Origin: Ranitomeya imitator
Lineage: Eukaryota
Length of the DNA: 64,000 bases
Direction of reading: 5' to 3'
Assembly (NCBI RefSeq): GCF_032444005.1
Contig: NC_091285.1
Span: forward strand, 617,024,001 to 617,088,000
Shown here: positions 1 to 43,234 of the stretch, piece by piece
Position numbering within the stretch: the first letter of the stretch is position 1
Layout: the number at the start of each line of letters is the position of its first letter
Position numbers and translations under genes: made by a program
Notes under the pieces: model-generated
What the model was told of the DNA's origin: nothing
The model's database searches: none
The model's input: the letters and a program-made list of their open reading frames with translations, nothing else

Positions 1-119
1 TTTTCACGTATGACTGTCTATAAGGTTACAAAGAAACATATCTATTATTCCATGTACATCGTATTTAATCTCTACACAGTTGATAAATATGTATCACCTT
101 TTCTTTTTCTTTTTTTTAA

Positions 120-477
120 CCTGATATTGATTTTTTTTTCATCAATTTTATTCATTTTTTATTTTGTTCTTATTTATTATTATTTGTTTTCTTTTAGATT
201 TTGTTTAGTTCCGATCGTGGATTTTTCACATGCTGTTTTCCATACGTAATTATGGAGGCGGTCATCTATCCTAAGATGCTGTTTTTTGTTTTTTTTTAGA
301 TCTGATATTGATTTTTTTTTCATCAATTTTATTCATTTATTATTTTGTTCTTATCTTATTTATTATTATTTGTTTTCTTTTATATTTTGTTTAGTTCCGA
401 TTGTGGATTTTTCACATGCTGTTTTCCATACGTGATTATGGATTATGGAGGCGATCATCTATCCTAAGATGCTGTTT
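120..477. repeat. Tandem duplication of an AT-rich ~180-bp unit (2 copies)
   Basis: CTGATATTGATTTTTTTT...CTAAGATGCTGTTT occurs at ~120-284 and again at ~301-477 with small indels. Confidence 0.85.
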
Positions 478-7704: not shown

Positions 7705-8127
7705 AGGGCTATTCCCATCTACACTATCCTATCCCAATATGAAGTAGGTGTAATAATAAAAGTTACAAAATATTAGCAAATAACTCCAATTGAAAATGAG
7801 GCATAGTTCTTTTGATTTGCTATGTCTCTTACCCCATGTGCAGGGCATTGCAGTCCTTGGACCACATATTTTGAGGCTGTTAGATAGCCAAAAAACATGC
7901 AGGGATTACCCATGTATGGCAGTCAATAACCTCATGTTTTTTGGCTGCCTAATAGCCGTAAAGCATGCTGGGTGCGAACTTCAGCACCTGCGATACTCAC
8001 TTTCGCTCATCACTAGTTACGACCACTCATATAGTGACAGTTAGCTGTTAGTGGTCATATCCATGGACACCTAAGCTACTGAAATGCTCTGCTCATGGGG
8101 TAAGCATCATAGCTTATCAGTAGAACG
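7705..8127. mobile_element. T2/Kolobok-type MITE, left part (right part at 28509-28599)
   Basis: Starts TTAA|AGGGCTATTCCCATCT...ATCCCAATATG.AGTAGGTGTAATAATAA...AATATTAGCAAA. The reverse complement of this arm is found at 28509-28599, beyond the 20-kb insertion. Confidence 0.8.
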
Positions 8128-8545
8128 CAGAGGTGTAGCTAGGGTTTTGGTTCTGGGGGCGAAGCCTCTGAGTGGGCCCCTAACCAGGTAACCTTGATTA
8201 CAACTCGGTGACTCCTCCTAATAGTAGAGGAGAACTTCAGCAGATGACCGTGCTATTACTGAAGATAATCTCTATATAAAGACCAACATGGATATGGTCA
8301 GTGGTAGATACCAGCCCTACAGAACATATAAGAGCTCACAGCACAGTTACAGATAATCTCTTACTGCTGATGTTCTTTCTGATGGAATCGTTCATTTTTC
8401 CCGTATTTTCCATCTGGCCCAGACCGACATGACAACTTCTTCCACCCAGGATCCGTCTGCAGAGAATACAACAAAGACACATTTCACATCTCATATTCCA
8501 ACCCCATCACCATCTATTCCCAACCTGCACAAACTCCTCATCCTG

Positions 8546-11500
8546 CTGATACCCCAATACTGAGCTGCTGCTGCCGTATGTGTCCCTATTACTGCCTCTG
8601 ATACCCCAATACTGAGCCACTGCTGCCGTATGTGTCCCTATTACTGCACCTGATACCCCAATACTGAGCCGCTGATGCTGTATGTGTCCCTATTACTGCA
8701 CCTGATACCCCAATACTGAGCCGCTGCTGCTGTATGTGTCCCTATTACTGCACCTGATACCCCAATACTGAGCCGCTGCTGCCGTATGTGTCCCTATTAC
8801 TGCACCTGATACCCCAATACTGAGCCGCTGCTGCTGTATGTGTCCCTATTACTGCACCTGATACCCCAATACTGAGCCGCTGCTGCCGTATGTGTCCCTA
8901 TTACTGCACCTGATACCCCAATACTGAGCCGCTGCTGCTGTATGTGTCCCTATTACTGCACCTGATACCCCAATACTGAGCCGCTGCTGCCGTATGTGTC
9001 CCTATTACTGCACCTGATACCCCAATACTGAGCCCCTGCTGCCGTATGTGTCCCTATTACTGCACCTGATACCCCAATACTGAGTTGCTGCTGCTGTATG
9101 TGTCCCTATTACTGCCTGATACCCCAATACTGAGCCGCTGCTGCCGTATGTGTCCCTATTACTGCCTGATACCCCGATACTGAGCCGCTGCTGCCGTATG
9201 TGTCCCTATTACTGCCCCTGATACCCCAATACTGAGCAGCTGCTGCCGTATGTGTCCATATTACTGCACCTGATATACCAATACTGAGCCGCTGCCGCCG
9301 TATGTGTCCCTATTACTGCACCTGATACCCCAATACTGAGCCGCTGCTGCCGTATGTGTCCCTATTACTGCACCTGATACCCCAATACTGAGCCGCTGCT
9401 GCCGTATGTGTCCCTATTACTGCACCTGATACCCCAATACTGAGCCGCTGCTGCCGTATGTGTCCCTTTTACTGCACCTGATACCCCAATACTGAGCTGC
9501 TGCTGCCGTATGTATCCCTATTACTGCCCGATACCCCAATACTGAGCCGCTGCTTCCGTATGTGTCCCTATTACTGCACCTGATACCCTAATACTGAGCC
9601 GCTGCTGCCGTATGTGTCCCTATTACTGCCCCTGTTACCCCAATACTGAGCCGCTGCTGCCGTATGTATCCCTATTACTGCCCCTGATACCCCGATACTG
9701 AGCCGCTGCTGCCGTATGTGTCCCTATTACTGCACCTGATACCCCGATACTGAGTTGCTGCTTCCGTATGTGTCCCTATTACTGCACCTGATACCCCAAC
9801 ACTGAGCCACTGCTGCCGTTTGTGTCCATATTACTGCACCTGATACCCCAATACTGAGCAACTGCTGCCGTATGTGTCCCTATTACTGCACCTGATACCC
9901 CAATACTGAGCCACTGCTGCCGTATGTGTCCCTATTACTGCACCTGATACCCCAATACTGAGCCGCTGGTGCCGTATGTCCCTAACACTGCACCTCGTAC
10001 CCCAATACTGAGCCGCTGCTTCCGTATGTGTCCCTATTACTGCACCTGATACCCCGATACTGAGCCGCTGCTTCCGTATGTCCCTAATACTGCACCTCGT
10101 ACCCCAATACTGAGCCGCTGCTTCCGTATGTGTCCCTATTACTGCACCTGATACCCCGATACTGAGCCACTGCTTCCATAGGTGTCCCTATTACTGCCCC
10201 TGATACCCCAATACTAAGCCGCTGCTGCCGTATGTGTCCCTATCACTGCCCCTGATACCCCAATACTGAGCCGCTGCTGCCGTATGTCCCTATTACTGCA
10301 CCTGATACCCCAATACTGAGCCGCTGCTGCCATGTGACCCTATTACTGCACCTAATACCCCAATACTGAGCCACTGCTGCTGTATGTGATCCAATTATTC
10401 CACCTGATACCCCAATACTGAGCCGCTGATGCCGTATGTCCCTATTACTGCACCTGATACCCCGATACTGAGCCGCTGCTGCCGTATGTCCCTATTACTG
10501 CACCTGATACCCCAATACTGAGCTGCTGCTGCCCTGTGTCCCTATTACTGCACCTGATACCCCAATACTGAGCCGCTGCTCCCGTATGTGTCCCTATTAC
10601 TGCACCTGATACCCCAATACTGAACCGCTGCTGCCGTATGTCCCTATTACTGCCCCTGATACCCCAATACTGAGCCGCTGCTGCTGTTTGTGTCCCTATT
10701 ACTGCACCTGATACCCCAATACTGAGCCGCTGCTGCCGTATGTGTCCCTATTACTGCACCTGATACCCCAATACTGAGCCGCTGCTGCTGTATGTGTCCC
10801 TATTACTGCCCCTGATACCCCAATACTAAGCCTCTGCTGCCATATGTTTCCCTATTACTGCACCTAATACCCCAAAATTAAGCCTCTGCTGCCGTATGTG
10901 TCCCTATTACTGCACCTGATACCCCAATACTGAACCGCTGCTGCCCTATGTGTCCCTATTACTGCACCTGATACCCCAATACTGAGCCGCTGCTGCTGTA
11001 TGTGTCCCTATTACTGCCCCTGATACCCCGATACTGAGCCGCTGCTGGCGTATGTGTCCCTATTACTGCACCTGATACCCCAATACTGAGCCGCTGCTGC
11101 CGTATGTGTCCCTATTACTGCCCCTGATACCCCAATACTAAGCCTCTGCTGCCATGTTTCCCTATTACTGCACCTAACACCCCAATACTAAGCCTCTGCT
11201 GCCGTATGTGTCCCTATTACTGCACCTAATACCCCAATACTAAGCCTCTGCTGCCGTATGTGTCCCTATTACTGCACCTGATACCCCGATACTGAGCCGC
11301 TGCTGCCATATGTGTCCCTATTACTGCACCTGATACCCCAATACTGAGCCGCTGCTGCCGTATGTGTCCCTATTACTGCCCCGATACCCCAATACTAAGC
11401 CTCTGCTGCCATGTTTCCCTATTACTGCACCTAACACCCCAATACTAAGCCTCTGCTGCCGTATGTGTCCCTATTACTGCACCTAATACCCCAATACTGA

Positions 11501-12568
11501 GCCGCTGCTGCCGTATGTGTCCCTATTACTGCCCCTGATACCCCAATACTGAGCCGCTGCTGCCCTATGTGTCCCTATTACTGCCCCTGATACCGCAATA
11601 CTGAGCCGCTGCTGCTGTATGTGTGCCTATTACTGCACCTGATACCCCGATACTGAGCCGCTGCTGGCGTATGTGTCCCTATTACTGCACCTGATACCCC
11701 AATACTGAGCCGCTGCTGCCGTATGTGTCCCTATTACTGCCCCTGATACCCCAATACTAAGCCTCTGCTGCCATGTTTCCCTATTACTGCACCTAACACC
11801 CCAATACTGAGCCTCTGCTGCCGTATGTGTCCCTATTACTGCACCTAACACCCCAATACTGAGCCTCTGCTGCCGTATGTGTCCCTATTACTGCCCCTGA
11901 TACCCCAATACTGAGCCGCTGCTGCCGTATGTGTCCCTATTACTGCACCTAACACCCCAATACTGAGCCTCTGCTGCCGTATGTGTCCCTATTACTGCCC
12001 CTGATACCCCAATACTAAGCCGCTGCTGCCGTATGTGTCCCTGTTACTACACCCGATACCCCAATACTGAGCCGCTGCTGCCGTATGTGTCCCTATTACT
12101 GCCCCTGATACCTCAATACTGAGCTGCTGCTGCCCTATGTGTCCCTATTACTGCCCCTGATACCCCAATACTGAGCCGCTGCTGCTGTATGTGTCCCTAT
12201 TACTGCACCTGATACCCCAATACTGAGCCACTGCTGCCGTATGTGTCCCTATTACTGCCCCTGATACCCCGATACTGAGCCGCTGCTGGCGTATGTGTCC
12301 CTATTACTGCACCTGATACCCCAATACTGAGCAGCTGCTGCCGTATGTGTCCCTATTACTGCACCTGATACCCCAATACTGAGCCGCTGCTGCCGTGTTT
12401 CTATTACTGCACCTGATACCCCAATACTGAGCCGCTGCTGCCATATGACCCTATTACTGCACCTATTACCGAATACTGAGCCGCTGCTGCCGTATGTGTC
12501 CCTATTACTGCACCTGATACCTCAATACTGAGCCGCTGCTGCCGCATGTGTCCCTATTACTGCACCTG
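8546..12568. repeat. 52-bp minisatellite, ~77 copies
   Basis: Unit CTGATACCCCAATACTGAGCCGCTGCTGCCGTATGTGTCCCTATTACTGCAC, with 50-bp and substitution variants. Confidence 0.98.
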
Positions 12569-12994
12569 CTGTGTGGTTCTCTGTGACCTGTAAATTCTAA
12601 AGCAACCCTCTATAATATAGTAATGCCAGGTGCAAGTGACCTAGAAAACAGTGCCCACATTTTGCCCCCTAGACAGTAATATTGCCCTGTGTGCCCCTTT
12701 GATAGCCACAGTAACCTGAGTTCCCCTATAACTATAAGTGCCCACTTTACATTTAATAATGTACGGAGTCTCCCCCTGTACAGCTCCCTTATACACAGCA
12801 TGATGCTCTCTTATACACATATAATGCCCCTCACTGTATACTGACTCCTTAGTAGCTCTTAAACTGTTTGATGGCTCCAACAATGTATAATGACCCCCAC
12901 ACTGTAATCTCCATTTTGTATGATGGCCCTGTAGATAGCCTCCATATACAGTAGCATAATGCACCAAATAGTCCACAATATAGTATAATGCATT

Positions 12995-15900
12995 CCCCAT
13001 AGGCAGACTCTATAGCATACGGCAGCCCCCATAGTCAGACCCTGTAATAAGGCAGCACCCCCATATAGGCAGACCATGTAATGAGGCGGCAGACCCTGTA
13101 ATAAGGCAGCCCCCCATAGGCAGCCCCTGTAATAAGGCGGTCCCCATAGGCAGACCCTGTAATAAGGCGGCATATCCCCAGAAGCAGACCCTGTAATAAG
13201 GCAGGCCCAATAGTCAGATCCTGTAATAAGGCAGCCCCCATAGTCAGACCCTGTAATAAGGCAGCACCCCTATAGGCAGACTCTGTAATGAGGTAGCCCC
13301 CATAGTCAGACCCTGTAATAAGGCAGCACTCCTATAGGCAGACCCTGTAATAAGGCAGCACCCCCATAGTCAGACCCTGTAATAAGGAGGCACCCCTATA
13401 GTCAGACCCTGTAATAAGGCAGCCTCCCCATAGGCAAATCCTGTAATAAGGCAGCACCCCAATAGTCAGACCCTGTAATAAGGCAGCCTCCCCATAGGCA
13501 GATCCTGTAATAAGGCAGCACCCCAATAGTCAGACCCTGTAATAAGGCAGCCCCCATAGTCAGACCCTGTAATAAGGCAGCACCCCTATAGGCAGACACT
13601 GTAATAAGGCAGCACCCCCACAGGCAGACCCTGTAATAAGGCAGCACCCCTATTGTCAGACCCTGTAATAAGGCAGCACCCCTTTAGGCAGACCCTGTAA
13701 TAAGGCAGCCCCCATAGTCAGACCCTGTAATAAGGCAGCACCCCTATAGGCAGACTCTGTAATGAGGTAGCCCCCATAGTCAGACCCTGTAATAAGGCAG
13801 CACCCCCATAGTCAGACCCTGTAATAAGGAGGCACCCCTATAGGCAGACCCTGTAATAAGGCAGCCTCCCCATAGGCAAATCCTGTAATAAGGCAGCACC
13901 CCAATAGTCAGACCCTGTAATAAGGCAGCCTCCCCATAGGCAAATCCTGTAATAAGGCAGCCTCCCCATAGGCAAATCCTGTAATAAGGCAGCCTCCCCA
14001 TAGGCAAATCCTGTAATAAGGCAGCCTCCCCATAGGCAAATCCTGTAATAAGGAGGCACCCCCATAGGCAAATCCTGTAATAAGGCAGCACCCCAATAGT
14101 CAGACCCTGTAATAAGGCAGCCTCCCCATAGGCAAATCCTGTAATAAGGCAGCACCCCTATAGGCAAATCCTGTAATAAGGCAGCACCCCAATAGTCAGA
14201 CCCTGTAATAAGGCAGCACCCCAATAGTCAGACCCTGTAATAAGGCAGCCCCCCATAGGCAAATCCTGTAATAAGGCAGCACCCCAATAGTCAGACCCTG
14301 TAATAAGGCAGCCTCCCCATAGGCAAATCCTGTAATAAGGCAGCCTCCCCATAGGCAAATCCTGTAATAAGGCAGCACCCCTATAGGCAAATCCTGTAAT
14401 AAGGCAGCACCCCAATAGTCAGACCCTGTAATAAGGCAGCACCCCAATAGTCAGACCCTGTAATAAGGCAGCCCCCCATAGGCAAATCCTGTAATAAGGC
14501 AGCACCCCAATAGTCAGACCCTGTAATAAGGCAGCCTCCCCATAGGCAAATCCTGTAATAAGGCAGCACCCCAATAGTCAGACCCTGTAATAAGGCAGCC
14601 TCCCCATAGGCAAATCCTGTAATAAGGCAGCCTCCCCATAGTCAGACCCTGTAATAAGGAGGCACCCCTATAGGCAAATCCTGTAATAAGGCAGCACCCC
14701 AATAGTCAGACCCTGTAATAAGGCAGCACCCCAATAGTCAGACCCTGTAATAAGGCAGCCCCCCATAGGCAAATCCTGTAATAAGGCAGCACCCCAATAG
14801 TCAGACCCTGTAATAAGGCAGCCTCCCCATAGGCAAATCCTGTAATAAGGCAGCACCCCAATAGTCAGACCCTGTAATAAGTCAGCCTCCCCATAGGCAA
14901 ATCCTGTAATAAGGCAGCACCCCAATAGTCAGACCCTGTAATAAGGCAGCCTCCCCATAGGCAAATCCTGTAATAAGGCAGCACCCCAATAGTCAGACCC
15001 TGTAATAAGGCAGCACCCCTATAGGCAGACACTGTAATAAGGCAGCACCCCCACAGGCAGACCCTGTAATAAGGCAGCACCCCTATTGTCAGACCCTGTA
15101 ATAAGGCAGCACCCCTTTAGGCAGACTCTGTAATGAGGTAGCCCCCATAGTCAGACCCTGTAATAAGGCAGCACCCCCATAGTCAGACCCTGTAATAAGG
15201 AGGCACCCCTATAGGCAGACCCTGTAATAAGGCAGCCTCCCCATAGGCAAATCCTGTAATAAGGCAGCACCCCAATAGTCAGACCCTGTAATAAGGCAGC
15301 CTCCCCATAGGCAAATCCTGTAATAAGGCAGCACCCCAATAGTCAGACCCTGTAATAAGGCAGCCTCCCCATAGGCAAATCCTGTAATAAGGCAGCCTCC
15401 CCATAGGCAAATCCTGTAATAAGGAGGCACCCCTATAGGCAAATCCTGTAATAAGGCAGCACCCCAATAGTCAGACCCTGTAATAAGGCAGCACCCCAAT
15501 AGTCAGACCCTGTAATAAGGCAGCCCCCCATAGGCAAATCCTGTAATAAGGCAGCACCCCAATCGTCAGACCCTGTAATAAGGCAGCACCCCAATAGTCA
15601 GACCCTGTAATAAGGCAGCCTCCCCATAGGCAAATCCTGTAATAAGGCAGCCTCCCCAAAGTCAGACCCTGTAATAAGGAGGCACCCCTATAGGCAAATC
15701 CTGTAATAAGGCAGCACCCCAATAGTCAGACCCTGTAATAAGGCAGCACCCCAATAGTCAGACCCTGTAATAAGGCAGCCTCCCCATAGGCAAATCCTGT
15801 AATAAGGCAGCACCCCAATCGTCAGACCCTGTAATAAGGCAGCCTCCCCATAGGCAAATCCTGTAATAAGGCAGCACCCCAATAGTCAGACCCTGTAATA

Positions 15901-18900
15901 AGGCAGCCTCCCCATAGGCAAATCCTGTAATAAGGCAGCACCCCAATAGTCAGACCCTGTAATAAGGCAGCCTCCCCATAGGCAAATCCTGTAATAAGGC
16001 AGCACCCCAATCGTCAGACCCTGTAATAAGGCAGCCTCCCCATAGGCAAATCCTGTAATAAGGAGGCACCCCTATAGGCAAATCCTGTAATAAGGCAGCA
16101 CCCCAATAGTCAGACCCTGTAATAAGGCAGCCTCCCCATAGGCAAATCCTGTAATAAGGCAGCCTCCCCATAGTCAGACCCTGTAATAAGGAGGCACCCC
16201 TATAGGCAAATCCTGTAATAAGGCAGCACCCCAATAGTCAGACCCTGTAATAAGGCAGCACCCCAATAGTCAGACCCTGTAATAAGGCAGCCCCCCATAG
16301 GCAAATCCTGTAATAAGGCAGCACCCCAATAGTCAGACCCTGTAATAAGGCAGCCTCCCCATAGGCAAATCCTGTAATAAGGCAGCACCCCAATAGTCAG
16401 ACCCTGTAATAAGGCAGCCTCCCCATAGGCAAATCCTGTAATAAGGCAGCACCCCAATAGTCAGACCCTGTAATAAGGCAGCACCCCAATAGTCAGACCC
16501 TGTAATAAGGCAGCCCCCCATAGGCAAATCCAGACCCTGTAATAAGGCAGCACCCCTATAGGCAGACCCTGTAATAAGGCAGCCCCCCCATAGGCAAATC
16601 CTGTAATAAGGCAGCCTCCCCATAGTCAGACCCTGTAATAAGGCAGCACCCCAATAGTCAGACCCTGTAATAAGGCAGCACCCCAATAGTCAGACCCTGT
16701 AATAAGGCAGCCTCCCCATAGGCAAATCCTGTAATAAGGCAGCACCCCAATCGTCAGACCCTGTAATAAGGCAGCACCCCAATAGTCAGACCCTGTAATA
16801 AGGCAGCCTCCCCATAGGCAAATCCTGTAATAAGGCAGCCTCCTCATAGGCAAATCCTGTAATAAGGAGGCACCCCTATAGGCAAATCCTGTAATAAGGC
16901 AGCCTCCCCATAGGCAAATCCTGTAATAAGGCAGCCTCCCCATAGGCAAATCCTGTAATAAGGCAGCCTCCCCATAGGCAAATCCTGTAATCAGGAGGCA
17001 CCCCTATAGGCAAATCCTGTAATAAGGCAGCACCCCAATAGTCAGACCCTGTAATAAGGCAGCACCCCAATAGTCAGACCCTGTAATAAGGCAGCCCCCC
17101 ATAGGCAAATCCTGTAATAAGGCAGCCTCCCCATAGTCAGACCCTGTAATAAGGAGGCACCCCTATAGGCAAATCCTGTAATAAGGCAGCCGCCCCATAG
17201 TCAGACCCTGTAATAAGGAGGCACCCCTATAGGCAAATCCTGTAATAAGGCAGCACCCCAATAGTCAGACCCTGTAATAAGGCAGCCTCCCCATAGGCAA
17301 ATCCTGTAATAAGGCAGCCTCCCCATAGTCAGACCCTGTAATAAGGAGGCACCCCTATAGGCAAATCCTGTAATAAGGCAGCACCCCAATAGTCAGACCC
17401 TGTAATAAGGCAGCACCCCAATAGTCAGACCCTGTAATAAGGCAGCACCCCTATAGGCAGACACTGTAATAAGGCAGCACCCCCACAGGCAGACCCTGTA
17501 ATAAGGCAGCACCCCTATTGTCAGACCCTGTAATAAGGCAGCACCCCTTTAGGCAGACTCTGTAATGAGGTAGCCCCCATAGTCAGACCCTGTAATAAGG
17601 CAGCACCCCCATAGTCAGACCCTGTAATAAGGAGGCACCCCTATAGGCAGACCCTGTAATAAGGCAGCCTCCCCATAGGCAAATCCTGTAATAAGGCAGC
17701 ACCCCAATAGTCAGACCCTGTAATAGGGCAGCCTCCCCATAGGCAAATCCTGTAATAAGGCAGCACCCCAATAGTCAGACCCTGTAATAAGGCAGCCTCC
17801 CCATAGGCAAATCCTGTAATAAGGCAGCACCCCAATAGTCAGACCCTGTAATAAGGAGGCACCCCTATAGGCAAATCCTGTAATAAGGCAGCACCCCAAT
17901 AGTCAGACCCTGTAATAAGGCAGCCTCCCCATAGGCAAATCCTGTAATAAGGAGGCACCCCTATAGGCAAATCCTGTAATAAGGCAGCACCCCAATAGTC
18001 AGACCCTGTAATAAGGCAGCACCCCAATAGTCAGACCCTGTAATAAGGCAGCCTCCCCATAGGCAAATCCTGTAATAAGGCAGCACCCCAATAGTCAGAC
18101 CCTGTAATAAGGAGGCACCCCTATAGGCAAATCCTGTAATAAGGCAGCCTCCCCATAGGCAAATCCTGTAATAAGGAGGCACCCCTATAGGCAAATCCTG
18201 TAATAAGGCAGCACCCCAATAGTCAGACCCTGTAATAAGGCAGCACCCCAATAGTCAGACCCTGTAATAAGGCAGCCCCCCATAGGCAAATCCTGTAATA
18301 AGGTAGCACCCCAATCGTCAGACCCTGTAATAAGGCAGCACCCCAATAGTCAGACCCTGTAATAAGGCAGCCTCCCCATAGGCAAATCCTGTAATAAGGC
18401 AGCCTCCCCAAAGTCAGACCCTGTAATAAGGAGGCACCCCTATAGGCAAATCCTGTAATAAGGCAGCACCCCAATAGTCAGACCCTGTAATAAGGCAGCA
18501 CCCCAATAGTCAGACCCTGTAATAAGGCAGCCTCCCCATAGGCAAATCCTGTAATAAGGCAGCACCCCAATCGTCAGACCCTGTAATAAGGCAGCCTCCC
18601 CATAGGCAAATCCTGTAATAAGGCAGCACCCCAATAGTCAGACCCTGTAATAAGGCAGCCTCCCCATAGGCAAATCCTGTAATAAGGCAGCACCCCAATA
18701 GTCAGACCCTGTAATAAGGCAGCCTCCCCATAGGCAAATCCTGTAATAAGGCAGCACCCCAATCGTCAGACCCTGTAATAAGGCAGCCTCCCCATAGGCA
18801 AATCCTGTAATAAGGAGGCACCCCTATAGGCAAATCCTGTAATAAGGCAGCCTCCCCATAGGCAAATCCTGTAATAAGGCAGCCTCCCCATAGTCAGACC

Positions 18901-21900
18901 CTGTAATAAGGAGGCACCCCTATAGGCAAATCCTGTAATAAGGCAGCACCCCAATAGTCAGACCCTGTAATAAGGCAGCACCCCAATAGTCAGACCCTGT
19001 AATAAGGCAGCCCCCCATAGGCAAATCCTGTAATAAGGCAGCACCCCAATAGTCAGACCCTGTAATAAGGCAGCCTCCCCATAGGCAAATCCTGTAATAA
19101 GGCAGCACCCCAATAGTCAGACCCTGTAATAAGGCAGCACCCCAATAGTCAGACCCTGTAATAAGGCAGCCCCCCATAGGCAAATCCAGACCCTGTAATA
19201 AGGCAGCACCCCTATAGGCAGACCCTGTAATAAGGCAGCCCCCCCATAGGCAAATCCTGTAATAAGGCAGCCTCCCCATAGTCAGACCCTGTAATAAGGC
19301 AGCACCCCAATAGTCAGACCCTGTAATAAGGCAGCACCCCAATAGTCAGACCCTGTAATAAGGCAGCCTCCCCATAGGCAAATCCTGTAATAAGGCAGCA
19401 CCCCAATCGTCAGACCCTGTAATAAGGCAGCACCCCAATAGTCAGACCCTGTAATAAGGCAGCCTCCCCATAGGCAAATCCTGTAATAAGGCAGCCTCCT
19501 CATAGGCAAATCCTGTAATAAGGAGGCACCCCTATAGGCAAATCCTGTAATAAGGCAGCACCCCAATAGTCAGACCCTGTAATAAGGCAGCACCCCAATA
19601 GTCAGACCCTGTAATAAGGCAGCCCCCCATAGGCAAATCCTGTAATAAGGCAGCCTCCCCATAGTCAGACCCTGTAATAAGGAGGCACCCCTATAGGCAA
19701 ATCCTGTAATAAGGCAGCACCCCAATAGTCAGACCCTGTAATAAGGCAGCCTCCCCATAGGCAAATCCTGTAATAAGGCAGCCTCCCCATAGTCAGACCC
19801 TGTAATAAGGAGGCACCCCTATAGGCAAATCCTGTAATAAGGCAGCCTCCCCATAGTCAGACCCTGTAATAAGGAGGCACCCCTATAGGCAAATCCTGTA
19901 ATAAGGCAGCACCCCAATAGTCAGACCCTGTAATAAGGCAGCACCCCAATAGTCAGACCCTGTAATAAGGCAGCACCCCTATAGGCAGACACTGTAATAA
20001 GGCAGCACCCCCACAGGCAGACCCTGTAATAAGGCAGCACCCCTATTGTCAGACCCTGTAATAAAGCAGCACCCCTTTAGGCAGACTCTGTAATGAGGTA
20101 GCCCCCATAGTCAGACCCTGTAATAAGGCAGCACCCCCATAGTCAGACCCTGTAATAAGGAGGCACCCCTATAGGCAGACCCTGTAATAAGGCAGCCTCC
20201 CCATAGGCAAATCCTGTAATAAGGCAGCACCCCAATAGTCAGACCCTGTAATAAGGAGGCACCCCTATAGGCAAATCCTGTAATAAGGCAGCACCCCAAT
20301 AGTCAGACCCTGTAATAAGGCAGCCTCCCCATAGGCAAATCCTGTAATAAGGAGGCACCCCTATAGGCAAATCCTGTAATAAGGCAGCACCCCAATAGTC
20401 AGACCCTGTAATAAGGCAGCACCCCAATAGTCAGACCCTGTAATAAGGCAGCCTCCCCATAGGCAAATCCTGTAATAAGGCAGCACCCCAATAGTCAGAC
20501 CCTGTAATAAGGAGGCACCCCTATAGGCAAATCCTGTAATAAGGCAGCCTCCCCATAGGCAAATCCTGTAATAAGGCAGCCTCCCCATAGGCAAATCCTG
20601 CAATAAGGCAGCCTCCCCATAGGCAAATCCTGTAATAAGGAGGCACCCCTATAGGCAAATCCTGTAATAAGGCAGCACCCCAATAGTCAGACCCTGTAAT
20701 AAGGCAGCACCCCAATAGTCAGACCCTGTAATAAGGCAGCCCCCCATAGGCAAATCCTGTAATAAGGCAGCCTCCCCATAGTCAGACCCTGTAATAAGGA
20801 GGCACCCCTATAGGCAAATCCTGTAATAAGGCAGCCTCCCCATAGTCAGACCCTGTAATAAGGAGGCACCCGTATAGGCAAATCCTGTAATAAGGCAGCA
20901 CCCCAATAGTCAGACCCTGTAATAAGGCAGCCTCCCCATAGGCAAATCCTGTAATAAGGCAGCCTCCCCATAGTCAGACCCTGTAATAAGGAGGCACCCC
21001 TATAGGCAAATCCTGTAATAAGGCAGCACCCCAATAGTCAGACCCTGTAATAAGGCAGCACCCCAATAGTCAGACCCTGTAATAAGGCAGCACCCCTATA
21101 GGCAGACACTGTAATAAGGCAGCACCCCCACAGGCAGACCCTGTAATAAGGCAGCACCCCTATTGTCAGACCCTGTAATAAGGCAGCACCCCTTTAGGCA
21201 GACTCTGTAATGAGGTAGCCCCCATAGTCAGACCCTGTAATAAGGCAGCACCCCCATAGTCAGACCCTGTAATAAGGCAGCCTCCCCATAGGCAAATCCT
21301 GTAATAAGGCAGCACCCCAATAGTCAGACCCTGTAATAAGGCAGCCTCCCCATAGGCAAATCCTGTAATAAGGCAGCACCCCAATAGTCAGACCCTGTAA
21401 TAAGGCAGCCTCCCCATAGGCAAATCCTGTAATAAGGCAGCACCCCAATAGTCAGACCCTGTAATAAGGAGGCACCCCTATAGGCAAATCCTGTAATAAG
21501 GCAGCACCCCAATAGTCAGACCCTGTAATAAGGCAGCCTCCCCATAGGCAAATCCTGTAATAAGGAGGCACCCCTATAGGCAAATCCTGTAATAAGGCAG
21601 CACCCCAATAGTCAGACCCTGTAATAAGGCAGCACCCCAATAGTCAGACCCTGTAATAAGGCAGCCTCCCCATAGGCAAATCCTGTAATAAGGCAGCACC
21701 CCAATAGTCAGACCCTGTAATAAGGAGGCACCCCTATAGGCAAATCCTGTAATAAGGCAGCCTCCCCATAGGCAAATCCTGTAATAAGGCAGCCTCCCCA
21801 TAGGCAAATCCTGTAATAAGGCAGCCTCCCCATAGGCAAATCCTGTAATAAGGAGGCACCCCTATAGGCAAATCCTGTAATAAGGCAGCACCCCAATACT

Positions 21901-24900
21901 CAGACCCTGTAATAAGGCAGCACCCCAATAGTCAGACCCTGTAATAAGGCAGCCCCCCATAGGCAAATCCTGTAATAAGGCAGCACCCCAATCGTCAGAC
22001 CCTGTAATAAGGCAGCACCCCAATAGTCAGACCCTGTAATAAGGCAGCCTCCCCATAGGCAAATCCTGTAATAAGGCAGCCTCCCCAAAGTCAGACCCTG
22101 TAATAAGGAGGCACCCCTATAGGCAAATCCTGTAATAAGGCAGCACCCCAATAGTCAGACCCTGTAATAAGGCAGCACCCCAATAGTCAGACCCTGTAAT
22201 AAGGCAGCCTCCCCATAGGCAAATCCTGTAATAAGGCAGCACCCCAATCGTCAGACCCTGTAATAAGGCAGCCTCCCCATAGGCAAATCCTGTAATAAGG
22301 CAGCACCCCAATAGTCAGACCCTGTAATAAGGCAGCCTCCCCATAGGCAAATCCTGTAATAAGGCAGCACCCCAATAGTCAGACCCTGTAATAAGGCAGC
22401 CTCCCCATAGGCAAATCCTGTAATAAGGCAGCCTCCCCATAGTCAGACCCTGTAATAAGGAGGCACCCCTATAGGCAAATCCTGTAATAAGGCAGCACCC
22501 CAATAGTCAGACCCTGTAATAAGGCAGCACCCCAATAGTCAGACCCTGTAATAAGGCAGCCCCCCATAGGCAAATCCTGTAATAAGGCAGCACCCCAATA
22601 GTCAGACCCTGTAATAAGGCAGCCTCCCCATAGGCAAATCCTGTAATAAGGCAGCACCCCAATAGTCAGACCCTGTAATAAGGCAGCCTCCCCATAGGCA
22701 AATCCTGTAATAAGGCAGCACCCCAATAGTCAGACCCTGTAATAAGGCAGCACCCCAATAGTCAGACCCTGTAATAAGGCAGCCCCCCATAGGCAAATCC
22801 AGACCCTGTAATAAGGCAGCACCCCTATAGGCAGACCCTGTAATAAGGCAGCCCCCCCATAGGCAAATCCTGTAATAAGGCAGCCTCCCCATAGTCAGAC
22901 CCTGTAATAAGGCAGCACCCCAATAGTCAGACCCTGTAATAAGGCAGCACCCCAATAGTCAGACCCTGTAATAAGGCAGCCTCCCCATAGGCAAATCCTG
23001 TAATAAGGCAGCACCCCAATCGTCAGACCCTGTAATAAGGCAGCACCCCAATAGTCAGACCCTGTAATAAGGCAGCCTCCCCATAGGCAAATCCTGTAAT
23101 AAGGCAGCCTCCTCATAGGCAAATCCTGTAATAAGGAGGCACCCCTATAGGCAAATCCTGTAATAAGGCAGCACCCCAATAGTCAGACCCTGTAATAAGG
23201 CAGCACCCCAATAGTCAGACCCTGTAATAAGGCAGCCCCCCATAGGCAAATCCTGTAATAAGGCAGCCTCCCCATAGTCAGACCCTGTAATAAGGAGGCA
23301 CCCCTATAGGCAAATCCTGTAATAAGGCAGCCTCCCCATAGTCAGACCCTGTAATAAGGAGGCACCCCTATAGGCAAATCCTGTAATAAGGCAGCACCCC
23401 AATAGTCAGACCCTGTAATAAGGCAGCACCCCAATAGTCAGACCCTGTAATAAGGCAGCCTCCCCATAGGCAAATCCTGTAATAAGGCAGCACCCCAATA
23501 GTCAGACCCTGTAATAAGGCAGCCTCCCCATAGGCAAATCCTGTAATAAGGCAGCACCCCAATCGTCAGACCCTGTAATAAGGCAGCCTCCCCATAGGCA
23601 AATCCTGTAATAAGGAGGCACCCCTATAGGCAAATCCTGTAATAAGGCAGCACCCCAATAGTCAGACCCTGTAATAAGGCAGCACCCCAATAGTCAGACC
23701 CTGTAATAAGGCAGCCTCCCCATAGGCAAATCCTGTAATAAGGCAGCACCCCAATCGTCAGACCCTGTAATAAGGCAGCCTCCCCATAGGCAAATCCTGT
23801 AATAAGGCAGCACCCCAATAGTCAGACCCTGTAATAAGGCAGCCTCCCCATAGGCAAATCCTGTAATAAGGCAGCACCCCAATAGTCAGACCCTGTAATA
23901 AGGCAGCCTCCCCATAGGCAAATCCTGTAATAAGGCAGCACCCCAATCGTCAGACCCTGTAATAAGGCAGCCTCCCCATAGGCAAATCCTGTAATAAGGA
24001 GGCACCCCTATAGGCAAATCCTGTAATAAGGCAGCACCCCAATAGTCAGACCCTGTAATAAGGCAGCACCCCAATAGTCAGACCCTGTAATAAGGCAGCC
24101 CCCCATAGGCAAATCCTGTAATAAGGCAGCACCCCAATAGTCAGACCCTGTAATAAGGCAGCCTCCCCATAGGCAAATCCTGTAATAAGGCAGCACCCCA
24201 ATAGTCAGACCCTGTAATAAGGCAGCACCCCAATAGTCAGACCCTGTAATAAGGCAGCCCCCCATAGGCAAATCCAGACCCTGTAATAAGGCAGCACCCC
24301 TATAGGCAGACCCTGTAATAAGGCAGCCCCCCCATAGGCAAATCCTGTAATAAGGCAGCCTCCCCATAGTCAGACCCTGTAATAAGGCAGCACCCCAATA
24401 GTCAGACCCTGTAATAAGGCAGCACCCCAATAGTCAGACCCTGTAATAAGGCAGCCTCCCCATAGGCAAATCCTGTAATAAGGCAGCACCCCAATCGTCA
24501 GACCCTGTAATAAGGCAGCACCCCAATAGTCAGACCCTGTAATAAGGCAGCCTCCCCATAGGCAAATCCTGTAATAAGGCAGCCTCCTCATAGGCAAATC
24601 CTGTAATAAGGAGGCACCCCTATAGGCAAATCCTGTAATAAGGCAGCACCCCAATAGTCAGACCCTGTAATAAGGCAGCACCCCAATAGTCAGACCCTGT
24701 AATAAGGCAGCCCCCCATAGGCAAATCCTGTAATAAGGCAGCCTCCCCATAGTCAGACCCTGTAATAAGGAGGCACCCCATAGGCAAATCCTGTAATAAG
24801 GCAGCACCCCAATCGTCAGACCCTGTAATAAGGCAGCACCCCAATAGTCAGACCCTGTAATAAGGCAGCCTCCCCATAGGCAAATCCTGTAATAAGGCAG

Positions 24901-27900
24901 CCTCCTCATAGGCAAATCCTGTAATAAGGAGGCACCCCTATAGGCAAATCCTGTAATAAGGCAGCACCCCAATAGTCAGACCCTGTAATAAGGCAGCACC
25001 CCAATAGTCAGACCCTGTAATAAGGCAGCCTCCCCATAGGCAAATCCTGTAATAAGGCAGCACCCCAATCGTCAGACCCTGTAATAAGGCAGCCTCCCCA
25101 TAGGCAAATCCTGTAATAAGGAGGCACCCCTATAGGCAAATCCTGTAATAAGGCAGCACCCCAATAGTCAGACCCTGTAATAAGGCAGCACCCCAATAGT
25201 CAGACCCTGTAATAAGGCAGCCCCCCATAGGCAAATCCTGTAATAAGGCAGCACCCCAATAGTCAGACCCTGTAATAAGGCAGCCTCCCCATAGGCAAAT
25301 CCTGTAATAAGGCAGCACCCCAATAGTCAGACCCTGTAATAAGGCAGCCTCCCCATAGGCAAATCCTGTAATAAGGCAGCACCCCAATAGTCAGACCCTG
25401 TAATAAGGCAGCACCCCAATAGTCAGACCCTGTAATAAGGCAGCCCCCCATAGGCAAATCCAGACCCTGTAATAAGGCAGCACCCCTATAGGCAGACCCT
25501 GTAATAAGGCAGCCCCCCCATAGGCAAATCCTGTAATAAGGCAGCCTCCCCATAGTCAGACCCTGTAATAAGGCAGCACCCCAATAGTCAGACCCTGTAA
25601 TAAGGCAGCACCCCAATAGTCAGACCCTGTAATAAGGCAGCCTCCCCATAGGCAAATCCTGTAATAAGGCAGCACCCCAATCGTCAGACCCTGTAATAAG
25701 GCAGCACCCCAATAGTCAGACCCTGTAATAAGGCAGCCTCCCCATAGGCAAATCCTGTAATAAGGCAGCCTCCTCATAGGCAAATCCTGTAATAAGGAGG
25801 CACCCCTATAGGCAAATCCTGTAATAAGGCAGCACCCCAATAGTCAGACCCTGTAATAAGGCAGCACCCCAATAGTCAGACCCTGTAATAAGGCAGCCCC
25901 CCATAGGCAAATCCTGTAATAAGGCAGCCTCCCCATAGTCAGACCCTGTAATAAGGAGGCACCCCTATAGGCAAATCCTGTAATAAGGCAGCACCCCAAT
26001 AGTCAGACCCTGTAATAAGGCAGCACCCCAATAGTCAGACCCTGTAATAAGGCAGCCTCCCCATAGGCAAATCCTGTAATAAGGCAGCACCCCAATAGTC
26101 AGACCCTGTAATAAGGCAGCCTCCCCATAGGCAAATCCTGTAATAAGGCAGCACCCCAATCGTCAGACCCTGTAATAAGGCAGCCTCCCCATAGGCAAAT
26201 CCTGTAATAAGGAGGCACCCCTATAGGCAAATCCTGTAATAAGGCAGCACCCCAATAGTCAGACCCTGTAATAAGGCAGCCCCCCATAGGCAAATCCAGA
26301 CCCTGTAATAAGGCAGCACCCCTATAGGCAGACCCTGTAATAAGGCAGCCCCCCCATAGGCAAATCCTGTAATAAGGCAGCCTCCCCATAGTCAGACCCT
26401 GTAATAAGGAGGCACCCCTATAGGCAAATCCTGTAATAAGGCAGCACCCCAATAGTCAGACCCTGTAATAAGGCAGCACCCCAATAGTCAGACCCTGTAA
26501 TAAGGCAGCCTCCCCATAGGCAAATCCTGTAATAAGGCAGCACCCCAATAGTCAGACCCTGTAATAAGGAGGCACCCCTATAGGCAAATCCTGTAATAAG
26601 GCAGCCTCCCCATAGGCAAATCCTGTAATAAGGCAGCCTCCCCATAGGCAAATCCTGTAATAAGGCAGCCTCCCCATAGGCAAATCCTGTAATAAGGCAG
26701 CCTCCCCATAGGCAAATCCTGTAATAAGGCAGCCTCCCCATAGGCAAATCCTGTAATAAGGCAGCCTCCCCATAGTCAGACCCTGTAATAAGGAGGCACC
26801 CCTATAGGCAAATCCTGTAATAAGGCAGCACCCCAATAGTCAGACCCTGTAATAAGGCAGCACCCCAATAGTCAGACCCTGTAATAAGGCAGCACCCCCA
26901 TAGGCAAATCCTGTAATAAGGCAGCACCCCAATCGTCAGACCCTGTAATAAGGCAGCCTCCCCATAGGCAAATCCTGTAATAAGGCAGCACCCCAATCGT
27001 CAGACCCTGTAATAAGGCAGCCTCCCCATAGGCAAATCCTGTAATAAGGCAGCACCCCAATAGTCAGACCCTGTAATAAGGCAGCACCCCAATAGTCAGA
27101 CCCTGTAATAAGGCAGCCTCCCCATAGGCAAATCCTGTAATAAGGCAGCACCCCAATCGTCAGACCCTGTAATAAGGCAGCCTCCCCATAGGCAAATCCT
27201 GTAATAAGGCAGTAACCCAATCGTCAGACCCTGTAATAAGGCAGCCTCCCCATAGGCAAATCCTGTAATAAGGAGGCACCCCTATAGGCAAATCCTGTAA
27301 TAAGGCAGCACCCCAATAGTCAGACCCTGTAATAAGGCAGCCTCCCCATAGGCAAATCCTGTAATAAGGCAGCACCCCAATAGTCAGACCCTGTAATAAG
27401 GCAGCCTCCCCATAGGCAAATCCTGTAATAAGGCAGCACCCCAATAGTCAGACCCTGTAATAAGGCAGCCTCCCCATAGGCAAATCCTGTAATAAGGCAG
27501 CCTCCCCATAGTCAGACCCTGTAATAAGGAGGCACCCCTATAGGCAAATCCTGTAATAAGGCAGCACCCCAATAGTCAGACCCTGTAATAAGGCAGCACC
27601 CCAATAGTCAGACCCTGTAATAAGGCAGCCCCCCATAGGCAAATCCTGTAATAAGGCAGCACCCCAATAGTCAGACCCTGTAATAAGGCAGCCTCCCCAT
27701 AGGCAAATCCTGTAATAAGGCAGCACCCCAATAGTCAGACCCTGTAATAAGGCAGCCTCCCCATAGGCAAATCCTGTAATAAGGCAGCACCCCAATAGTC
27801 AGACCCTGTAATAAGGCAGCCTCTCCATAGGCAAATCCTGTAATAAGGCAGCCTCCCCATAGTCAGACCCTGTAATAAGGAGGCACCCCTATAGGCAAAT

Positions 27901-28121
27901 CCTGTAATAAGGCAGCACCCCAATAGTCAGACCCTGTAATAAGGCAGCACCCCAATAGTCAGACCCTGTAATAAGGCAGCACCCCAATAGTCAGACCCTG
28001 TAATAAGGCAGCCCCCCATAGGCAAATCCAGACCCTGTAATAAGGCAGCACCCCTATAGGCAGACCCTGTAATAAGGCAGCCCCCCATAGGCAAATCCTG
28101 TAATAAGGCAGCAGCACCCAT
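12995..28121. repeat. 32-bp minisatellite, ~470 copies, with higher-order structure
   Basis: Constant core CTGTAATAAGG alternates with a few alleles (e.g. CAGACCCTGTAATAAGGCAGCACCCCAATAGT, CAAATCCTGTAATAAGGCAGCCTCCCCATAGG). Copy number is estimated as length/32. Confidence 0.98.
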
Positions 28122-28508
28122 AAAAAAACAAATAAATACTCACCTCTCTTCTTCCTGGTTCCTGCGCTGCTCCCGCTGATCAGTGCGTCAGATACCGACA
28201 CTGACAGGGGGATGATGGGAGAAGGAGCACAGCGCTCCTCCCATCATTGCGATCAGCTGTATCGGCTAAATGCCGGTACAGCTGATCTTCCAATGACAGG
28301 CAGGGGGCCCACTGCTGGCACCGGGCCCCCCCCGCCTGCTCAGGGGCTCCATAGCACCAGAGCAGGGAGATCGATTCTCCCTGCTCTGCCGTAGAAAGTA
28401 ACTGTATCGGCGTGCTGCACGTGCCAACACAGTTACAGTAACGTAGCTCCGGGTGGACCCCCTCAGAGCTCCCTCTGCCTCCCCGGTAGCTACGCTACTG
28501 GTAGAAAG

Positions 28509-28599
28509 TACTACATTTCTAATTGGAGGTCTTTGCTAATATTATTATTATTACACCTACTACATATTGGGATAAGATCTTGGAGATGGGAATACCCCT
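28509..28599. mobile_element. T2/Kolobok-type MITE, right arm (continuation of 7705-8127)
   Basis: TTTGCTAATATT...TTATTACACCTACT.CATATTGGGAT...AGATGGGAATACCCCT|TTAC is the reverse complement of the 7705 arm. Confidence 0.8.
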
Positions 28600-35033: not shown

Positions 35034-35282
35034 AGTAGATCTGTCATCACATTTTACAATGCAAACTAGATGCATTAATCAGTAGATATACTAGACTTGA
35101 TGTGGCTAGTGTACAGAGTCGTAACCTTAGTCTGATGGGCCCCAGTGAAAAATTTGGCCCTGGGCCACCACCTGCGTGTTTGTCAGATTTATGGGCCCTT
35201 GTAAGCTTTCTAAATCCTATAAAGACATAAGTGTTCACCCTTCCCCCTTCATGATGTAGCAATATTCCACATCCCTGGCCCC

Positions 35283-43222: not shown

Positions 43223-43234
43223 TTATGTTAAATA

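What the first reader, a model, noticed from the sequence alone, without database searches (positions are those of the whole stretch)
8128..28500. 20.4-kb hAT-type element that is ~94% minisatellite
TIRs (11/14) and an 8-bp TSD (GTAGAACG/GTAGAAAG) bracket a 4-kb 52-mer array, a ~0.4-kb spacer and a 15-kb 32-mer array. An 8-bp TSD with CAG termini fits hAT elements (established). The imperfect TIRs and TSD imply an old insertion while the 32-mer array is homogeneous, so the arrays probably expanded in place after transposition (inference). Such elements would seed large tandem arrays across the genome and could contribute to frog genome size.
Basis: partly seen in the sequence, partly recalled or inferred. 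Interest (0 to 1): 0.8.

Follow-up and report, generated by a model that had tools for sequence, protein, structure and literature searches.

The report
Array-filled non-autonomous frog hAT transposon
A 20.4-kb cut-and-paste (hAT-type) jumping gene without a transposase gene sits in a poison-frog genome, is 94% made of two repeat arrays, and one array seems to have grown about ten-fold after the element landed; the scan has already met this kind of array-filled hAT in the same genome.

Summary
A 52-mer array (8546-12568), a 426-bp spacer and a 32-mer array (12995-28122) lie between ends at 8128 and 28500, with an 11/14 TIR and a 7/8 8-bp TSD. This is the only such pair in the search space (chance 0.8-3.4%).

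Three independent results support the boundaries:
- The 20.4 kb interrupts one arm of a palindromic host MITE, and the arm closes up when the insert and one TSD copy are removed.
- Public-run depth rises 13-38-fold at about 8128.
- A contig from another copy starts to match exactly at 8128.

The ends fit hAT: 8-bp TSD, a CAGAG terminus, and the first 10 nt identical to Tol2. There is no transposase, so membership rests on the ends alone.

The family is very abundant (roughly 10^4 copy-equivalents). Other copies in three frog samples carry the 52-mer at the same junction, so that array is inherited, not home-grown. Non-CpG private divergence is about 2% in the 52-mer and in the first 1.5 kb of the 32-mer. 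It is 0-0.3% in the remaining 13.6 kb, which therefore probably expanded in place.

I could not show that the two ends co-occur in other copies, and I could not verify the array length. This is a known kind, already met on other DNA of this genome by this scan.

The parts
8120..8127 (+). Left copy of the 8-bp target site duplication (GTAGAACG)
   Evidence: Read directly. It matches the right copy 7/8. It lies in the host MITE arm at the position that pairs with AGTTCT in the partner arm.
8128..8182 (+). Left terminal inverted repeat. It starts CAGAGGTGTAGCTA, and gapped similarity to the right end runs to about 55 nt.
   Evidence: The first 10 nt equal both published Tol2 ends (PMC4818426). 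X18 record 11 begins to match at exactly 8128, and depth steps up here.
8128..8545 (+). Left unique end (418 bp), non-coding, not unusually structured, with a TATA-like TATATAAAG at about 8274
   Evidence: Summed depth is 1.2-2.9e5 in X3 against 11.8 on the single-copy flank. The longest ORF is 52 aa. DNA fold z is -1.3. The copy differs from the family majority at 17 or more listed sites and lacks about 11 bp near 8292-8295.
8546..12568 (+). 52-mer minisatellite, 78 units, old: 59 of 77 units are singletons
   Evidence: Mismatch is 16% per site at its two CpGs and 2.3% elsewhere. Contigs from other copies bridge the left end into a 52-mer unit in X1, X3 and X7 (table 8).
12569..12994 (+). Spacer (426 bp), no tandem structure, CpG-depleted (o/e 0.06)
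   Evidence: Its first 13 nt (ACCTGCTGTGTGG) recur as the loose-end consensus behind 52-mer units in X1 and X7 (table 7).
12995..14500 (+). Proximal, older part of the 32-mer array: 23% singleton units, 2.4% per base to the nearest other unit
14501..28122 (+). Young bulk of the 32-mer array (about 13.6 kb), made of about 20 recurring unit types in blocks that repeat at offsets of about 1.2-6.3 kb
   Evidence: 0-0.27% per base private differences. The longest exact repeat is 883 bp.
28123..28500 (+). Right unique end (378 bp), GC-rich, a chain of six hairpins, ending in the right TIR ...GTAGCTACGCTACTG
   Evidence: DNA fold of 28200-28500 is -89.5 kcal/mol, z -10.2, with 0 of 100 shuffles as good. 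The region is held by the same DNA runs as the left end: X3, X4, X5, X6.
28501..28508 (+). Right copy of the target site duplication (GTAGAAAG); it fits the hAT target pattern nTnnnnAn
   Evidence: Read directly.
7698..8127 (.). Host: left arm, centre and first part of the right arm of a high-copy palindromic MITE into which the element inserted
   Evidence: Depth is 1e4-1e5. Most other copies lack 7855-8015 (joints 7854>8016).
28509..28607 (.). Host: the rest of the MITE's right arm, which continues 8127 once the insert and one TSD copy are removed
   Evidence: score 154 against 147 for the two other ways of joining. Its reverse complement matches the host family's loose-end consensus ...CCAATTAGAAATGTAGT (table 7).

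Best explanation
Window 8128-28500 is one copy of a very abundant, non-autonomous hAT-type DNA transposon of a poison frog. It has no transposase gene and must have been moved by a transposase supplied in trans. It inserted into the right arm of a palindromic host MITE and duplicated 8 bp of target.

The family's body plan already included a left end joined to a 52-mer array and a spacer. This copy therefore arrived with its 52-mer array, the spacer, a modest 32-mer array (perhaps 1.5 kb) and a hairpin-rich right end, for an inferred total of roughly 6-7 kb.

After insertion the copy aged: CpG decay, about 2% non-CpG change, and one TSD mismatch. Meanwhile the distal part of the 32-mer array kept duplicating multi-unit blocks in place, by unequal exchange or replication slippage. 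That added about 13.6 kb of nearly mutation-free units and brought the element to 20.4 kb.

Shown: the arrays, the boundaries, the single insertion event, the family's abundance, the inherited left-end/52-mer junction, and the age contrast inside the element.

Inferred: hAT membership (from the ends only), the size at insertion, and that the young 32-mer bulk arose at this locus.
For: Boundaries and single event:
- There is a unique TIR+TSD pair, and the end similarity runs to about 55 nt.
- The reverse complement of host arm 7698-7854 aligns continuously across 8127|28509.
- No inner TIR/TSD pair exists.
- Depth steps from 1.1e4 to 1.4e5 in X3, 1.7e4 to 2.4e5 in X1 and 1.1e3 to 4.1e4 in X7 between bins 8097-8137 and 8138-8178. 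X18 record 11 matches from exactly 8128, after 217 unlike letters.

hAT features:
- 8-bp TSD; CAGAG terminus (YARNG); the right TSD copy fits nTnnnnAn.
- The first 10 nt equal both Tol2 ends.

Family trait:
- Diverged contigs in X1, X3 and X7 bridge the left end into the 52-mer.
- The array-to-spacer junction recurs in X1 and X7.

Age contrast:
- 52-mer: 59/77 singleton units, 2.0% private non-CpG substitutions per site.
- 32-mer, first 1.5 kb: 2.4%.
- 32-mer, remainder: 0-0.27%, with 153 identical copies of one unit and recurring unit-order blocks.
- The 32-mer has no CpG, so I compared it with non-CpG sites.

Not an assembler loop: the longest exact repeat is 883 bp, and there are no off-diagonal matches of 99.5% or better.
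Against: - No second full copy could be fetched, so I have not shown that this left end and this right end belong to one family. The right end is not listed for organism C, which does hold the left end.
- There is no transposase, and no autonomous partner with matching ends was examined, so superfamily assignment rests on the termini.
- The right terminus has CAGTA, not YARNG, and the left TSD copy breaks nTnnnnAn.
- The low private divergence of the 32-mer bulk could also come from continuing homogenisation without net growth.
- Some differences of the left end from the family majority may be subfamily markers rather than age.
- The array length was not checked against long reads.
Confidence: 0.68

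Rival explanations
1. The element transposed at or near its present 20 kb, arrays included, as reported for the transposase-bearing giant hATs of this genome. The uniformity of the 32-mer then reflects later homogenisation (gene conversion, equal-sized exchanges), or a young master array, rather than growth at this site.
For: Earlier scan notes describe 21-25-kb array-filled hATs here, one of which was said to have arrived whole (not tested by me). Tol2-type elements are known for carrying large cargo (title and abstract of PMC1635535). The 52-mer array clearly came with the element.
Against: The 32-mer bulk has about ten times fewer private changes than the 52-mer's non-CpG sites and than the array's own first 1.5 kb. 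If all parts had arrived together and merely aged, they should look alike. The recurring blocks at many different offsets look like serial local duplications.
Confidence: 0.18
2. The element is a chimera. A left end, 52-mer and spacer from one hAT family were fused, before this insertion, to a 32-mer array and right end from a related family. The two arrays would then have separate histories.
For: The two arrays are unrelated in sequence (z 1.1). The left end is held in organisms A, B, C and D, but the right end is held only in A, B and weakly D. An untested scan note mentions hATs with different termini sharing an internal module.
Against: The two ends resemble each other over about 55 nt, as expected for one family. 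There is one TSD and no inner termini. This rival does not contradict the main reading; it only changes the element's prehistory.
Confidence: 0.1
3. The 15-kb length of the 32-mer array is an assembly artefact (mis-expanded or mis-collapsed), so the element's size and the 94% figure are unreliable.
For: Long, uniform arrays are the hardest parts of an assembly. No read-level check of the array was possible: read laying was limited to one call, and its description says it turns away long repeats.
Against: The unit order is complex and non-periodic. The longest exact repeat is 883 bp, and 1-kb chunks match elsewhere at only 94-98%. Long accurate reads could therefore place it uniquely.
Confidence: 0.06
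4. It is not a transposon. Two minisatellites happen to lie side by side, and the TIR and TSD are chance matches.
Against: The chance of such a pair is 0.8-3.4%. The same two positions are where a palindromic host MITE is interrupted, where depth jumps more than 10-fold, and where another copy's homology starts.
Confidence: 0.02

Closest known systems
Giant array-filled hAT transposons of this same poison-frog genome (earlier scan findings s1-280605, s1-292466, s1-279621, s1-294701, s1-280608; small version s1-295114)
   Same: hAT-type ends with an 8-bp TSD, a total size of 15-25 kb, three quarters or more made of the element's own internal tandem arrays, and a very abundant family.
   Different: This copy has no transposase gene (non-autonomous). 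It is 94% array. Its two arrays differ about ten-fold in age. I could not compare sequences, so I do not know whether it is a deletion derivative of one of those families.
miDNA4 MITE/satellite of Xenopus tropicalis (Scalvenzi and Pollet 2014, as summarised in PMC9659126 and PMC12628747)
   Same: A non-autonomous frog DNA transposon that carries a tandem repeat in variable copy number, spreads it round the genome, and has been discussed in relation to genome size.
   Different: miDNA4 is a Tc1/mariner MITE with short arrays. This element is hAT-type, has two unrelated minisatellites, and holds 4-kb and 15-kb arrays.
Xstir tandem repeats on the Xmix MITE of Xenopus laevis (Hikosaka and Kawahara 2004, cited in PMC9659126)
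   Same: Lineage-specific tandem repeats riding inside a TIR-bounded MITE in a frog.
   Different: A different element family and repeat unit; the Xstir satellite is listed there as derived from the TIR.
Tol2 of medaka (hAT superfamily)
   Same: 8-bp TSD. The termini begin CAGAGGTGTA, identical to the first 10 nt of this element's left end (PMC4818426).
   Different: Similarity stops after 10 nt. The right end shares only 7 of the first 12. Tol2 is 4.7 kb and autonomous (my own knowledge) and has no minisatellites. The terminal match is a lead, not proof of relationship.
Tetris foldback transposon of Drosophila virilis (PMC4079207)
   Same: A DNA transposon whose internal tandem repeats supplied the units of an expanding satellite.
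   Different: Tetris is a foldback element whose repeats lie in its long TIRs. It is an insect element, not a hAT.

Membership tests
hAT superfamily (non-autonomous member) | 8-bp target site duplication | tested here: met
   GTAGAACG / GTAGAAAG flank the ends. The host MITE arm closes best when the insert and exactly one 8-bp copy are removed.
hAT superfamily (non-autonomous member) | Short TIRs beginning YARNG (established knowledge of hAT termini) | tested here: inconclusive
   The left end CAGAG fits. The right end (reverse complement) CAGTA fits 4 of 5. The TIR is 11/14, with gapped similarity to about 55 nt.
hAT superfamily (non-autonomous member) | Target site pattern nTnnnnAn (established knowledge) | tested here: inconclusive
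   The right copy GTAGAAAG fits. The left copy GTAGAACG has C at position 7. Which copy carries the later mutation is unknown.
hAT superfamily (non-autonomous member) | A hAT transposase (DDE core, hAT dimerisation domain), either in the element or in an autonomous partner with the same ends | not testable with these tools
   There is no ORF over 140 aa in the element, and all long ones are array read-throughs. No frog genome could be searched for a partner. The three protein searches and two metagenome scans were blank.
hAT superfamily (non-autonomous member) | Multiple copies sharing both termini at different sites | tested here: inconclusive
   Left end: more than a 10-fold depth step at 8128-8138, and one contig with a different flank starting at 8128. 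Right end: held by the same DNA runs, but its boundary and its pairing with the left end were not tested.
Tol2-like hAT lineage | Termini CAGAGGTGTAAA... on both ends, and related subterminal sequence | tested here: not met
   The left end shares 10 of the first 12 nt and the right end only 7 of 12. There is no further similarity. I treat this as a resemblance only.
Transposon-borne satellite (MITE-satellite systems such as miDNA4, Xstir/Xmix) | The tandem repeat lies inside a TIR-bounded non-autonomous element and is present at the same internal position in many copies | tested here: met
   Met for the 52-mer: contigs from other copies in X1, X3 and X7 bridge 8458-8595 across the same junction, and the array-to-spacer junction recurs. 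Not tested for the 32-mer.
Transposon-borne satellite (MITE-satellite systems such as miDNA4, Xstir/Xmix) | Array copy number varies between copies of the element | not testable with these tools
   Only a depth ratio is available: the 52-mer against the left end is about 42 in X3 and about 14 in X1, against 78 units here. The tool warns that depth is not a copy number.

The most novel reading that the evidence does not exclude
The family acts as a genome-wide seeding system. Roughly 10^4 dispersed non-autonomous hAT copies each deposit short minisatellite starters. Individual starters then expand in place by an order of magnitude, perhaps helped by the strand-asymmetric, C-run-rich units and by the hairpin chain at the right end stalling replication. 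DNA-transposon-borne arrays would then be a distinct and measurable contributor to dendrobatid genome gigantism. By rough depth ratios, this one 52-mer alone accounts for some 20-40 Mb.
Probability: 0.25. Interest if true: 0.6.

Novelty: new member of a known kind. Interest (0 to 1): 0.35.

Why it matters
Poison-frog genomes are 6-13 Gb, and their published repeat analyses count hAT DNA without describing what is inside the elements (PMC6278860, PMC11152451). This copy carries an internal clock. An inherited, aged array and a fresh, locally grown array sit side by side in one insertion, so two processes can be separated: arrays spread by transposition, and arrays grown after landing. A genome-wide tabulation would show how much frog DNA comes from post-insertion growth of transposon-borne arrays. 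The principle is already known from Xenopus MITE satellites, and the scan has reported it before in this genome, so this copy is a clean example and not a new phenomenon.

Tried and rejected
Searches that led nowhere:
- Other copies in the window: BLAST of both ends and the spacer, and pattern searches with 3 mismatches, found only the copy itself.
- Other copies through the protein collection: the right-end 60-aa ORF, a 140-aa 32-mer read-through ORF and the 119-aa spacer ORF all gave no homologue.
- Other copies in JGI metagenomes: the left terminus and a 41-nt piece of the 52-mer gave 0 matches.
- The search of earlier findings by sequence was blank.
- Rfam on both ends gave only sub-threshold chance hits.

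Ideas tested and rejected:
- A nested second element between spacer and right end, or between left end and spacer: no TIR/TSD pair.
- The spacer as a decayed array: TRF at score 30 finds nothing in 12569-12994.
- A common origin of the 52-mer and 32-mer, or of either with the window's other arrays: not significant (z 1.1; at most 3.2).

Considered and rejected from the ends alone:
- Helitron: no TC...CTRR ends and no A|T target.
- A larger element 7698-28607 with 100-bp TIRs: those arms belong to a separate high-copy MITE. Other copies of that MITE lack the insert, and its depth profile differs.

Evidence I decided not to use:
- I first read the small shares as showing low-coverage runs. One search showed about 12x depth on single-copy flank, so I dropped that argument.
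- X18's locus-specific contigs at depth ~500 could not be used as evidence of transcription. The library kind is not on record, and a reduced-representation DNA library would look the same.
Full report
**1. What is in the sequence**

Tandem Repeats Finder reports a 52-mer array at 8546-12568 (78.1 copies, 91% matches). It also reports a 32-mer array from 12995/13088 to 28122 (470 copies, 84% matches). Between them lies a 426-bp stretch with no tandem structure even at a low TRF threshold.

The arrays make up 19,151 of the 20,373 bases between 8128 and 28500, which is 94%. Both arrays are C-rich on the + strand, with GC skew of -0.21 to -0.35. Their consensus units are not detectably related to each other (z 1.1) or to the other minisatellites of the window.

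The junctions read GTAGAACG|CAGAGGTGTAGCTA... and ...TAGCTACGCTACTG|GTAGAAAG.

**2. Are the boundaries more than chance?**

I scanned every pair of positions in 7900-8545 x 28123-28760 for an 8-bp direct repeat (7/8 or better) adjoining a 14-bp inverted repeat (11/14 or better). Only 8128/28500 was found. At least one such pair turns up in 0.8% of shuffles and in 3.4% of control pairs of real window sequence. With gaps allowed, the similarity of the two ends continues to about 55 nt: score 27 against 9.8+-3.7, reached by 0 of 1000 shuffles.

Three independent lines point to the same two positions.

(a) *The insert interrupts a host MITE.* The flanks are the two arms of a palindromic element. 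Region 7698-7798 matches the reverse complement of 28514-28607 at 80%, and 7806-7854 matches 8078-8126.
- The reverse complement of the left arm aligns without a break across 8127|28509. The score is best when the insert and exactly one TSD copy are removed: 154, against 147 when both or neither copy is kept.
- The host family's own loose-end consensus in public runs (...CCAATTAGAAATGTAGT) equals the reverse complement of the window's right flank (table 7).
- So the 20.4 kb is one insertion into a pre-existing MITE arm, and this works as an empty-site proxy.

(b) *Depth in public runs steps up at the left boundary.*

| Region | X3 depth | X1 depth |
|---|---|---|
| Unique flank 7400-7686 | 11.8 | about 9-13 |
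| Host MITE | 1e4-1e5 | 1e4-1e5 |
| Bin 8097-8137 | 1.1e4 | 1.7e4 |
| Bin 8138-8178 | 1.4e5 | 2.4e5 |

In X7 the same two bins go from 1.1e3 to 4.1e4.

(c) *Another copy starts at the same base.* One contig (X18 record 11, 365 nt) matches 8128-8274 with its positions 218-365, after 217 letters unlike the stretch (table 8). It is another copy, in a different flank, whose homology starts at exactly 8128.

No inner TIR/TSD pair exists between spacer and right end, or between left end and spacer. I therefore see no sign of a nested second element.

**3. What kind of element**

There is no coding capacity. The only ORFs above 90 aa are read-throughs of the 32-mer array or lie in the spacer, and three of them searched against 5.8 billion proteins found nothing.

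The ends fit the hAT superfamily as far as ends can:
- The TSD is 8 bp.
- The left terminus CAGAG fits YARNG.
- The right TSD copy GTAGAAAG fits nTnnnnAn.
- The first ten bases CAGAGGTGTA are identical to both ends of medaka Tol2, as printed in PMC4818426.

Some features do not fit. The right terminus is CAGTA, the left TSD copy has C at position 7, and similarity to Tol2 stops after ten bases. I therefore file it as a non-autonomous hAT-type element on terminal features only, and I treat Tol2 as a resemblance. The transposase criterion could not be tested.

The two ends are asymmetric. The left 300 nt folds no better than shuffles (z -1.3). The right 300 nt is a chain of six near-perfect hairpins (-89.5 kcal/mol as DNA, z -10.2, 0 of 100 shuffles as good). 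Two of the hairpins share CTGTATCGGC, which hints at an old internal duplication. Rfam finds nothing meaningful on either end.

**4. The family**

The window's species is probably organism B: X3 has 2 differences in 355 on the unique flank and 0 in 128 across the host/element junction. Organism A is about 5% diverged on the flank (table 8).

Divided by the single-copy depth, the left end stands at roughly 10^4 copy-equivalents in A and B. The 52-mer stands at roughly 4-7 x 10^5 unit-equivalents, or some 20-40 Mb. The tool warns that summed depth is not a copy number, so these are orders of magnitude only. The ratio of 52-mer to left end (about 42 in X3, about 14 in X1) suggests tens of units per copy on average, against 78 here.

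Diverged contigs (about 10% different) in X1, X3 and X7 run from the unique left end into a 52-mer unit across the same junction; records 8, 24 and 29-32 cover 8441-8595. The loose-end consensus behind a 52-mer unit in X1 and X7 begins ACCTGCTGTGTGG, which is exactly how the array passes into the spacer at 12566-12580. The order left end, 52-mer, spacer is therefore a family trait shared by three frog samples. It is not something that arose in this copy.

Both ends are held by the same DNA runs (X3, X4, X5, X6). The right end is not listed for organism C, which does hold part of the left end. I could not test whether the two ends pair in other copies.

**5. Ages inside the element**

That is weak: hAT TIRs are often imperfect from the start, and one change in eight bases has a huge error. 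Better clocks are available inside the element.

*The left end.* This copy differs from the family majority at 17 or more listed positions out of 420 (4% or more; 67 further positions were not shown). It also lacks about 11 bp near 8292-8295. Some of these differences may be subfamily markers.

*The arrays.*

| Segment | Units | Private divergence |
|---|---|---|
| 52-mer array | 77, of which 59 singletons | 16% per site at its two CpGs; 2.3% elsewhere; 2.0% private non-CpG substitutions |
| 32-mer, first 1.5 kb (13041-14488) | 23% singletons | 2.4% per base to the nearest other unit |
| 32-mer, remaining 13.6 kb | 0-6% singletons per bin | 0-0.27% per base |

(for the table.)

The 32-mer has no CpG (o/e 0.03), so it must be compared with non-CpG sites. 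It has only 47 unit types among 471 units, and one type occurs 153 times unchanged. The types are arranged in blocks, such as AAHGKDAABEABLC in my letter code, that recur at offsets of about 1.2-6.3 kb.

The proximal 32-mer and the 52-mer are thus equally old, and the distal 32-mer bulk is about ten-fold younger. The simplest reading is that an element of roughly 6-7 kb inserted and that 13.6 kb was later added at this site by serial block duplication.

Two alternatives cannot be excluded without other copies or alleles: continuing homogenisation without net growth, and transposition at full size from a young master. I give them 0.18 together.

**6. Assembly**

The array was not checked against reads. 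Only one read-laying run was allowed, and the tool's description says it turns away long repeats. The internal evidence is reassuring:
- The longest exact repeat is 883 bp.
- No off-diagonal match reaches 99.5%.
- 1-kb chunks match elsewhere at 94-98%.

This is not what an assembler loop looks like, and long accurate reads could resolve such an array.

**7. Comparison with what is known**

Non-autonomous DNA transposons that carry and spread tandem repeats are established. Examples are miDNA4 in Xenopus tropicalis and Xstir/Xmix in X. laevis (PMC9659126, PMC12628747), and Tetris in Drosophila virilis (PMC4079207). The miDNA4 work already discussed genome size.

The published poison-frog genome papers quantify hAT DNA: 255 Mb in Oophaga pumilio and 3.9% of the Dendrobates tinctorius assembly. 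Neither mentions internal arrays.

Within this scan, several 21-25-kb hAT elements with transposase genes and three quarters array content have already been reported on other DNA of this same genome. One small hAT-like element inflated by its minisatellite has also been noted. I did not test those notes.

The present element is the transposase-less counterpart. It is more array-rich at 94%, and it offers a usable internal age contrast.

**8. Verdict**

- The hAT-type reading is supported on ends alone.
- 'Expanded in place' is supported for most of the 32-mer array and contradicted for the 52-mer array.
- The kind is known and has been met before in this genome, so interest is moderate to low (0.35).
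- The decisive step is a genome-wide census of copies with array lengths, together with long-read and allelic checks. Neither was possible with these tools.

Noticed in passing
window 7698-8127 plus 28509-28607: The host is a high-copy palindromic MITE (summed depth 1e4-1e5 in three frog samples) with arms of about 155 bp and the family consensus ...CTTAAAGGGGTATTCCCATCTCCAAG.... Most other copies lack 7855-8015 (joints 7854>8016), and that piece itself holds a palindrome with 35-bp arms (7865-7899 / 7933-7967).
   Followed up: partly
window 7814-8548: Run X18 (library kind not on record, organism B) has contigs specific to this locus (0-2 differences) at a steady depth of ~500 across the host MITE, the junction and the element's left end, but none on 7400-7686. 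This could be a transcript running through the junction or a reduced-representation DNA library; I could not tell which. The same study's small runs hold the left end at shares of 0.59-0.83 but the right end at only 0.08-0.11.
   Followed up: partly
window 28200-28500: The right subterminal region is a chain of six near-perfect hairpins (DNA fold z -10.2). Hairpins at 28251-28287 and 28398-28436 share CTGTATCGGC. The palindrome GTAGCTAC sits in the terminal TIR.
   Followed up: partly
window 35270-36465, 38793-41240, 42848-43223, 56641-56969, 56932-57680: The other minisatellites of the window (33-mer, 32-mer, 45-mer) are related to one another (z 5-12) but not clearly to the 52-mer or 32-mer studied here. 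They belong to other findings on this window.
   Followed up: partly
window 8548-8600 (52-mer unit): The 52-mer is a major satellite. Summed depth is 8.4e6 in X3, 3.8e6 in X1 and 1.5e6 in X7, against about 10 for single-copy flank. That is roughly 20-40 Mb per genome, if depth ratios can be trusted.
   Followed up: partly
   Followed up: no
window 110-477: A T-rich 186-bp unit repeated twice (90% matches) at the start of the window.
   Followed up: no
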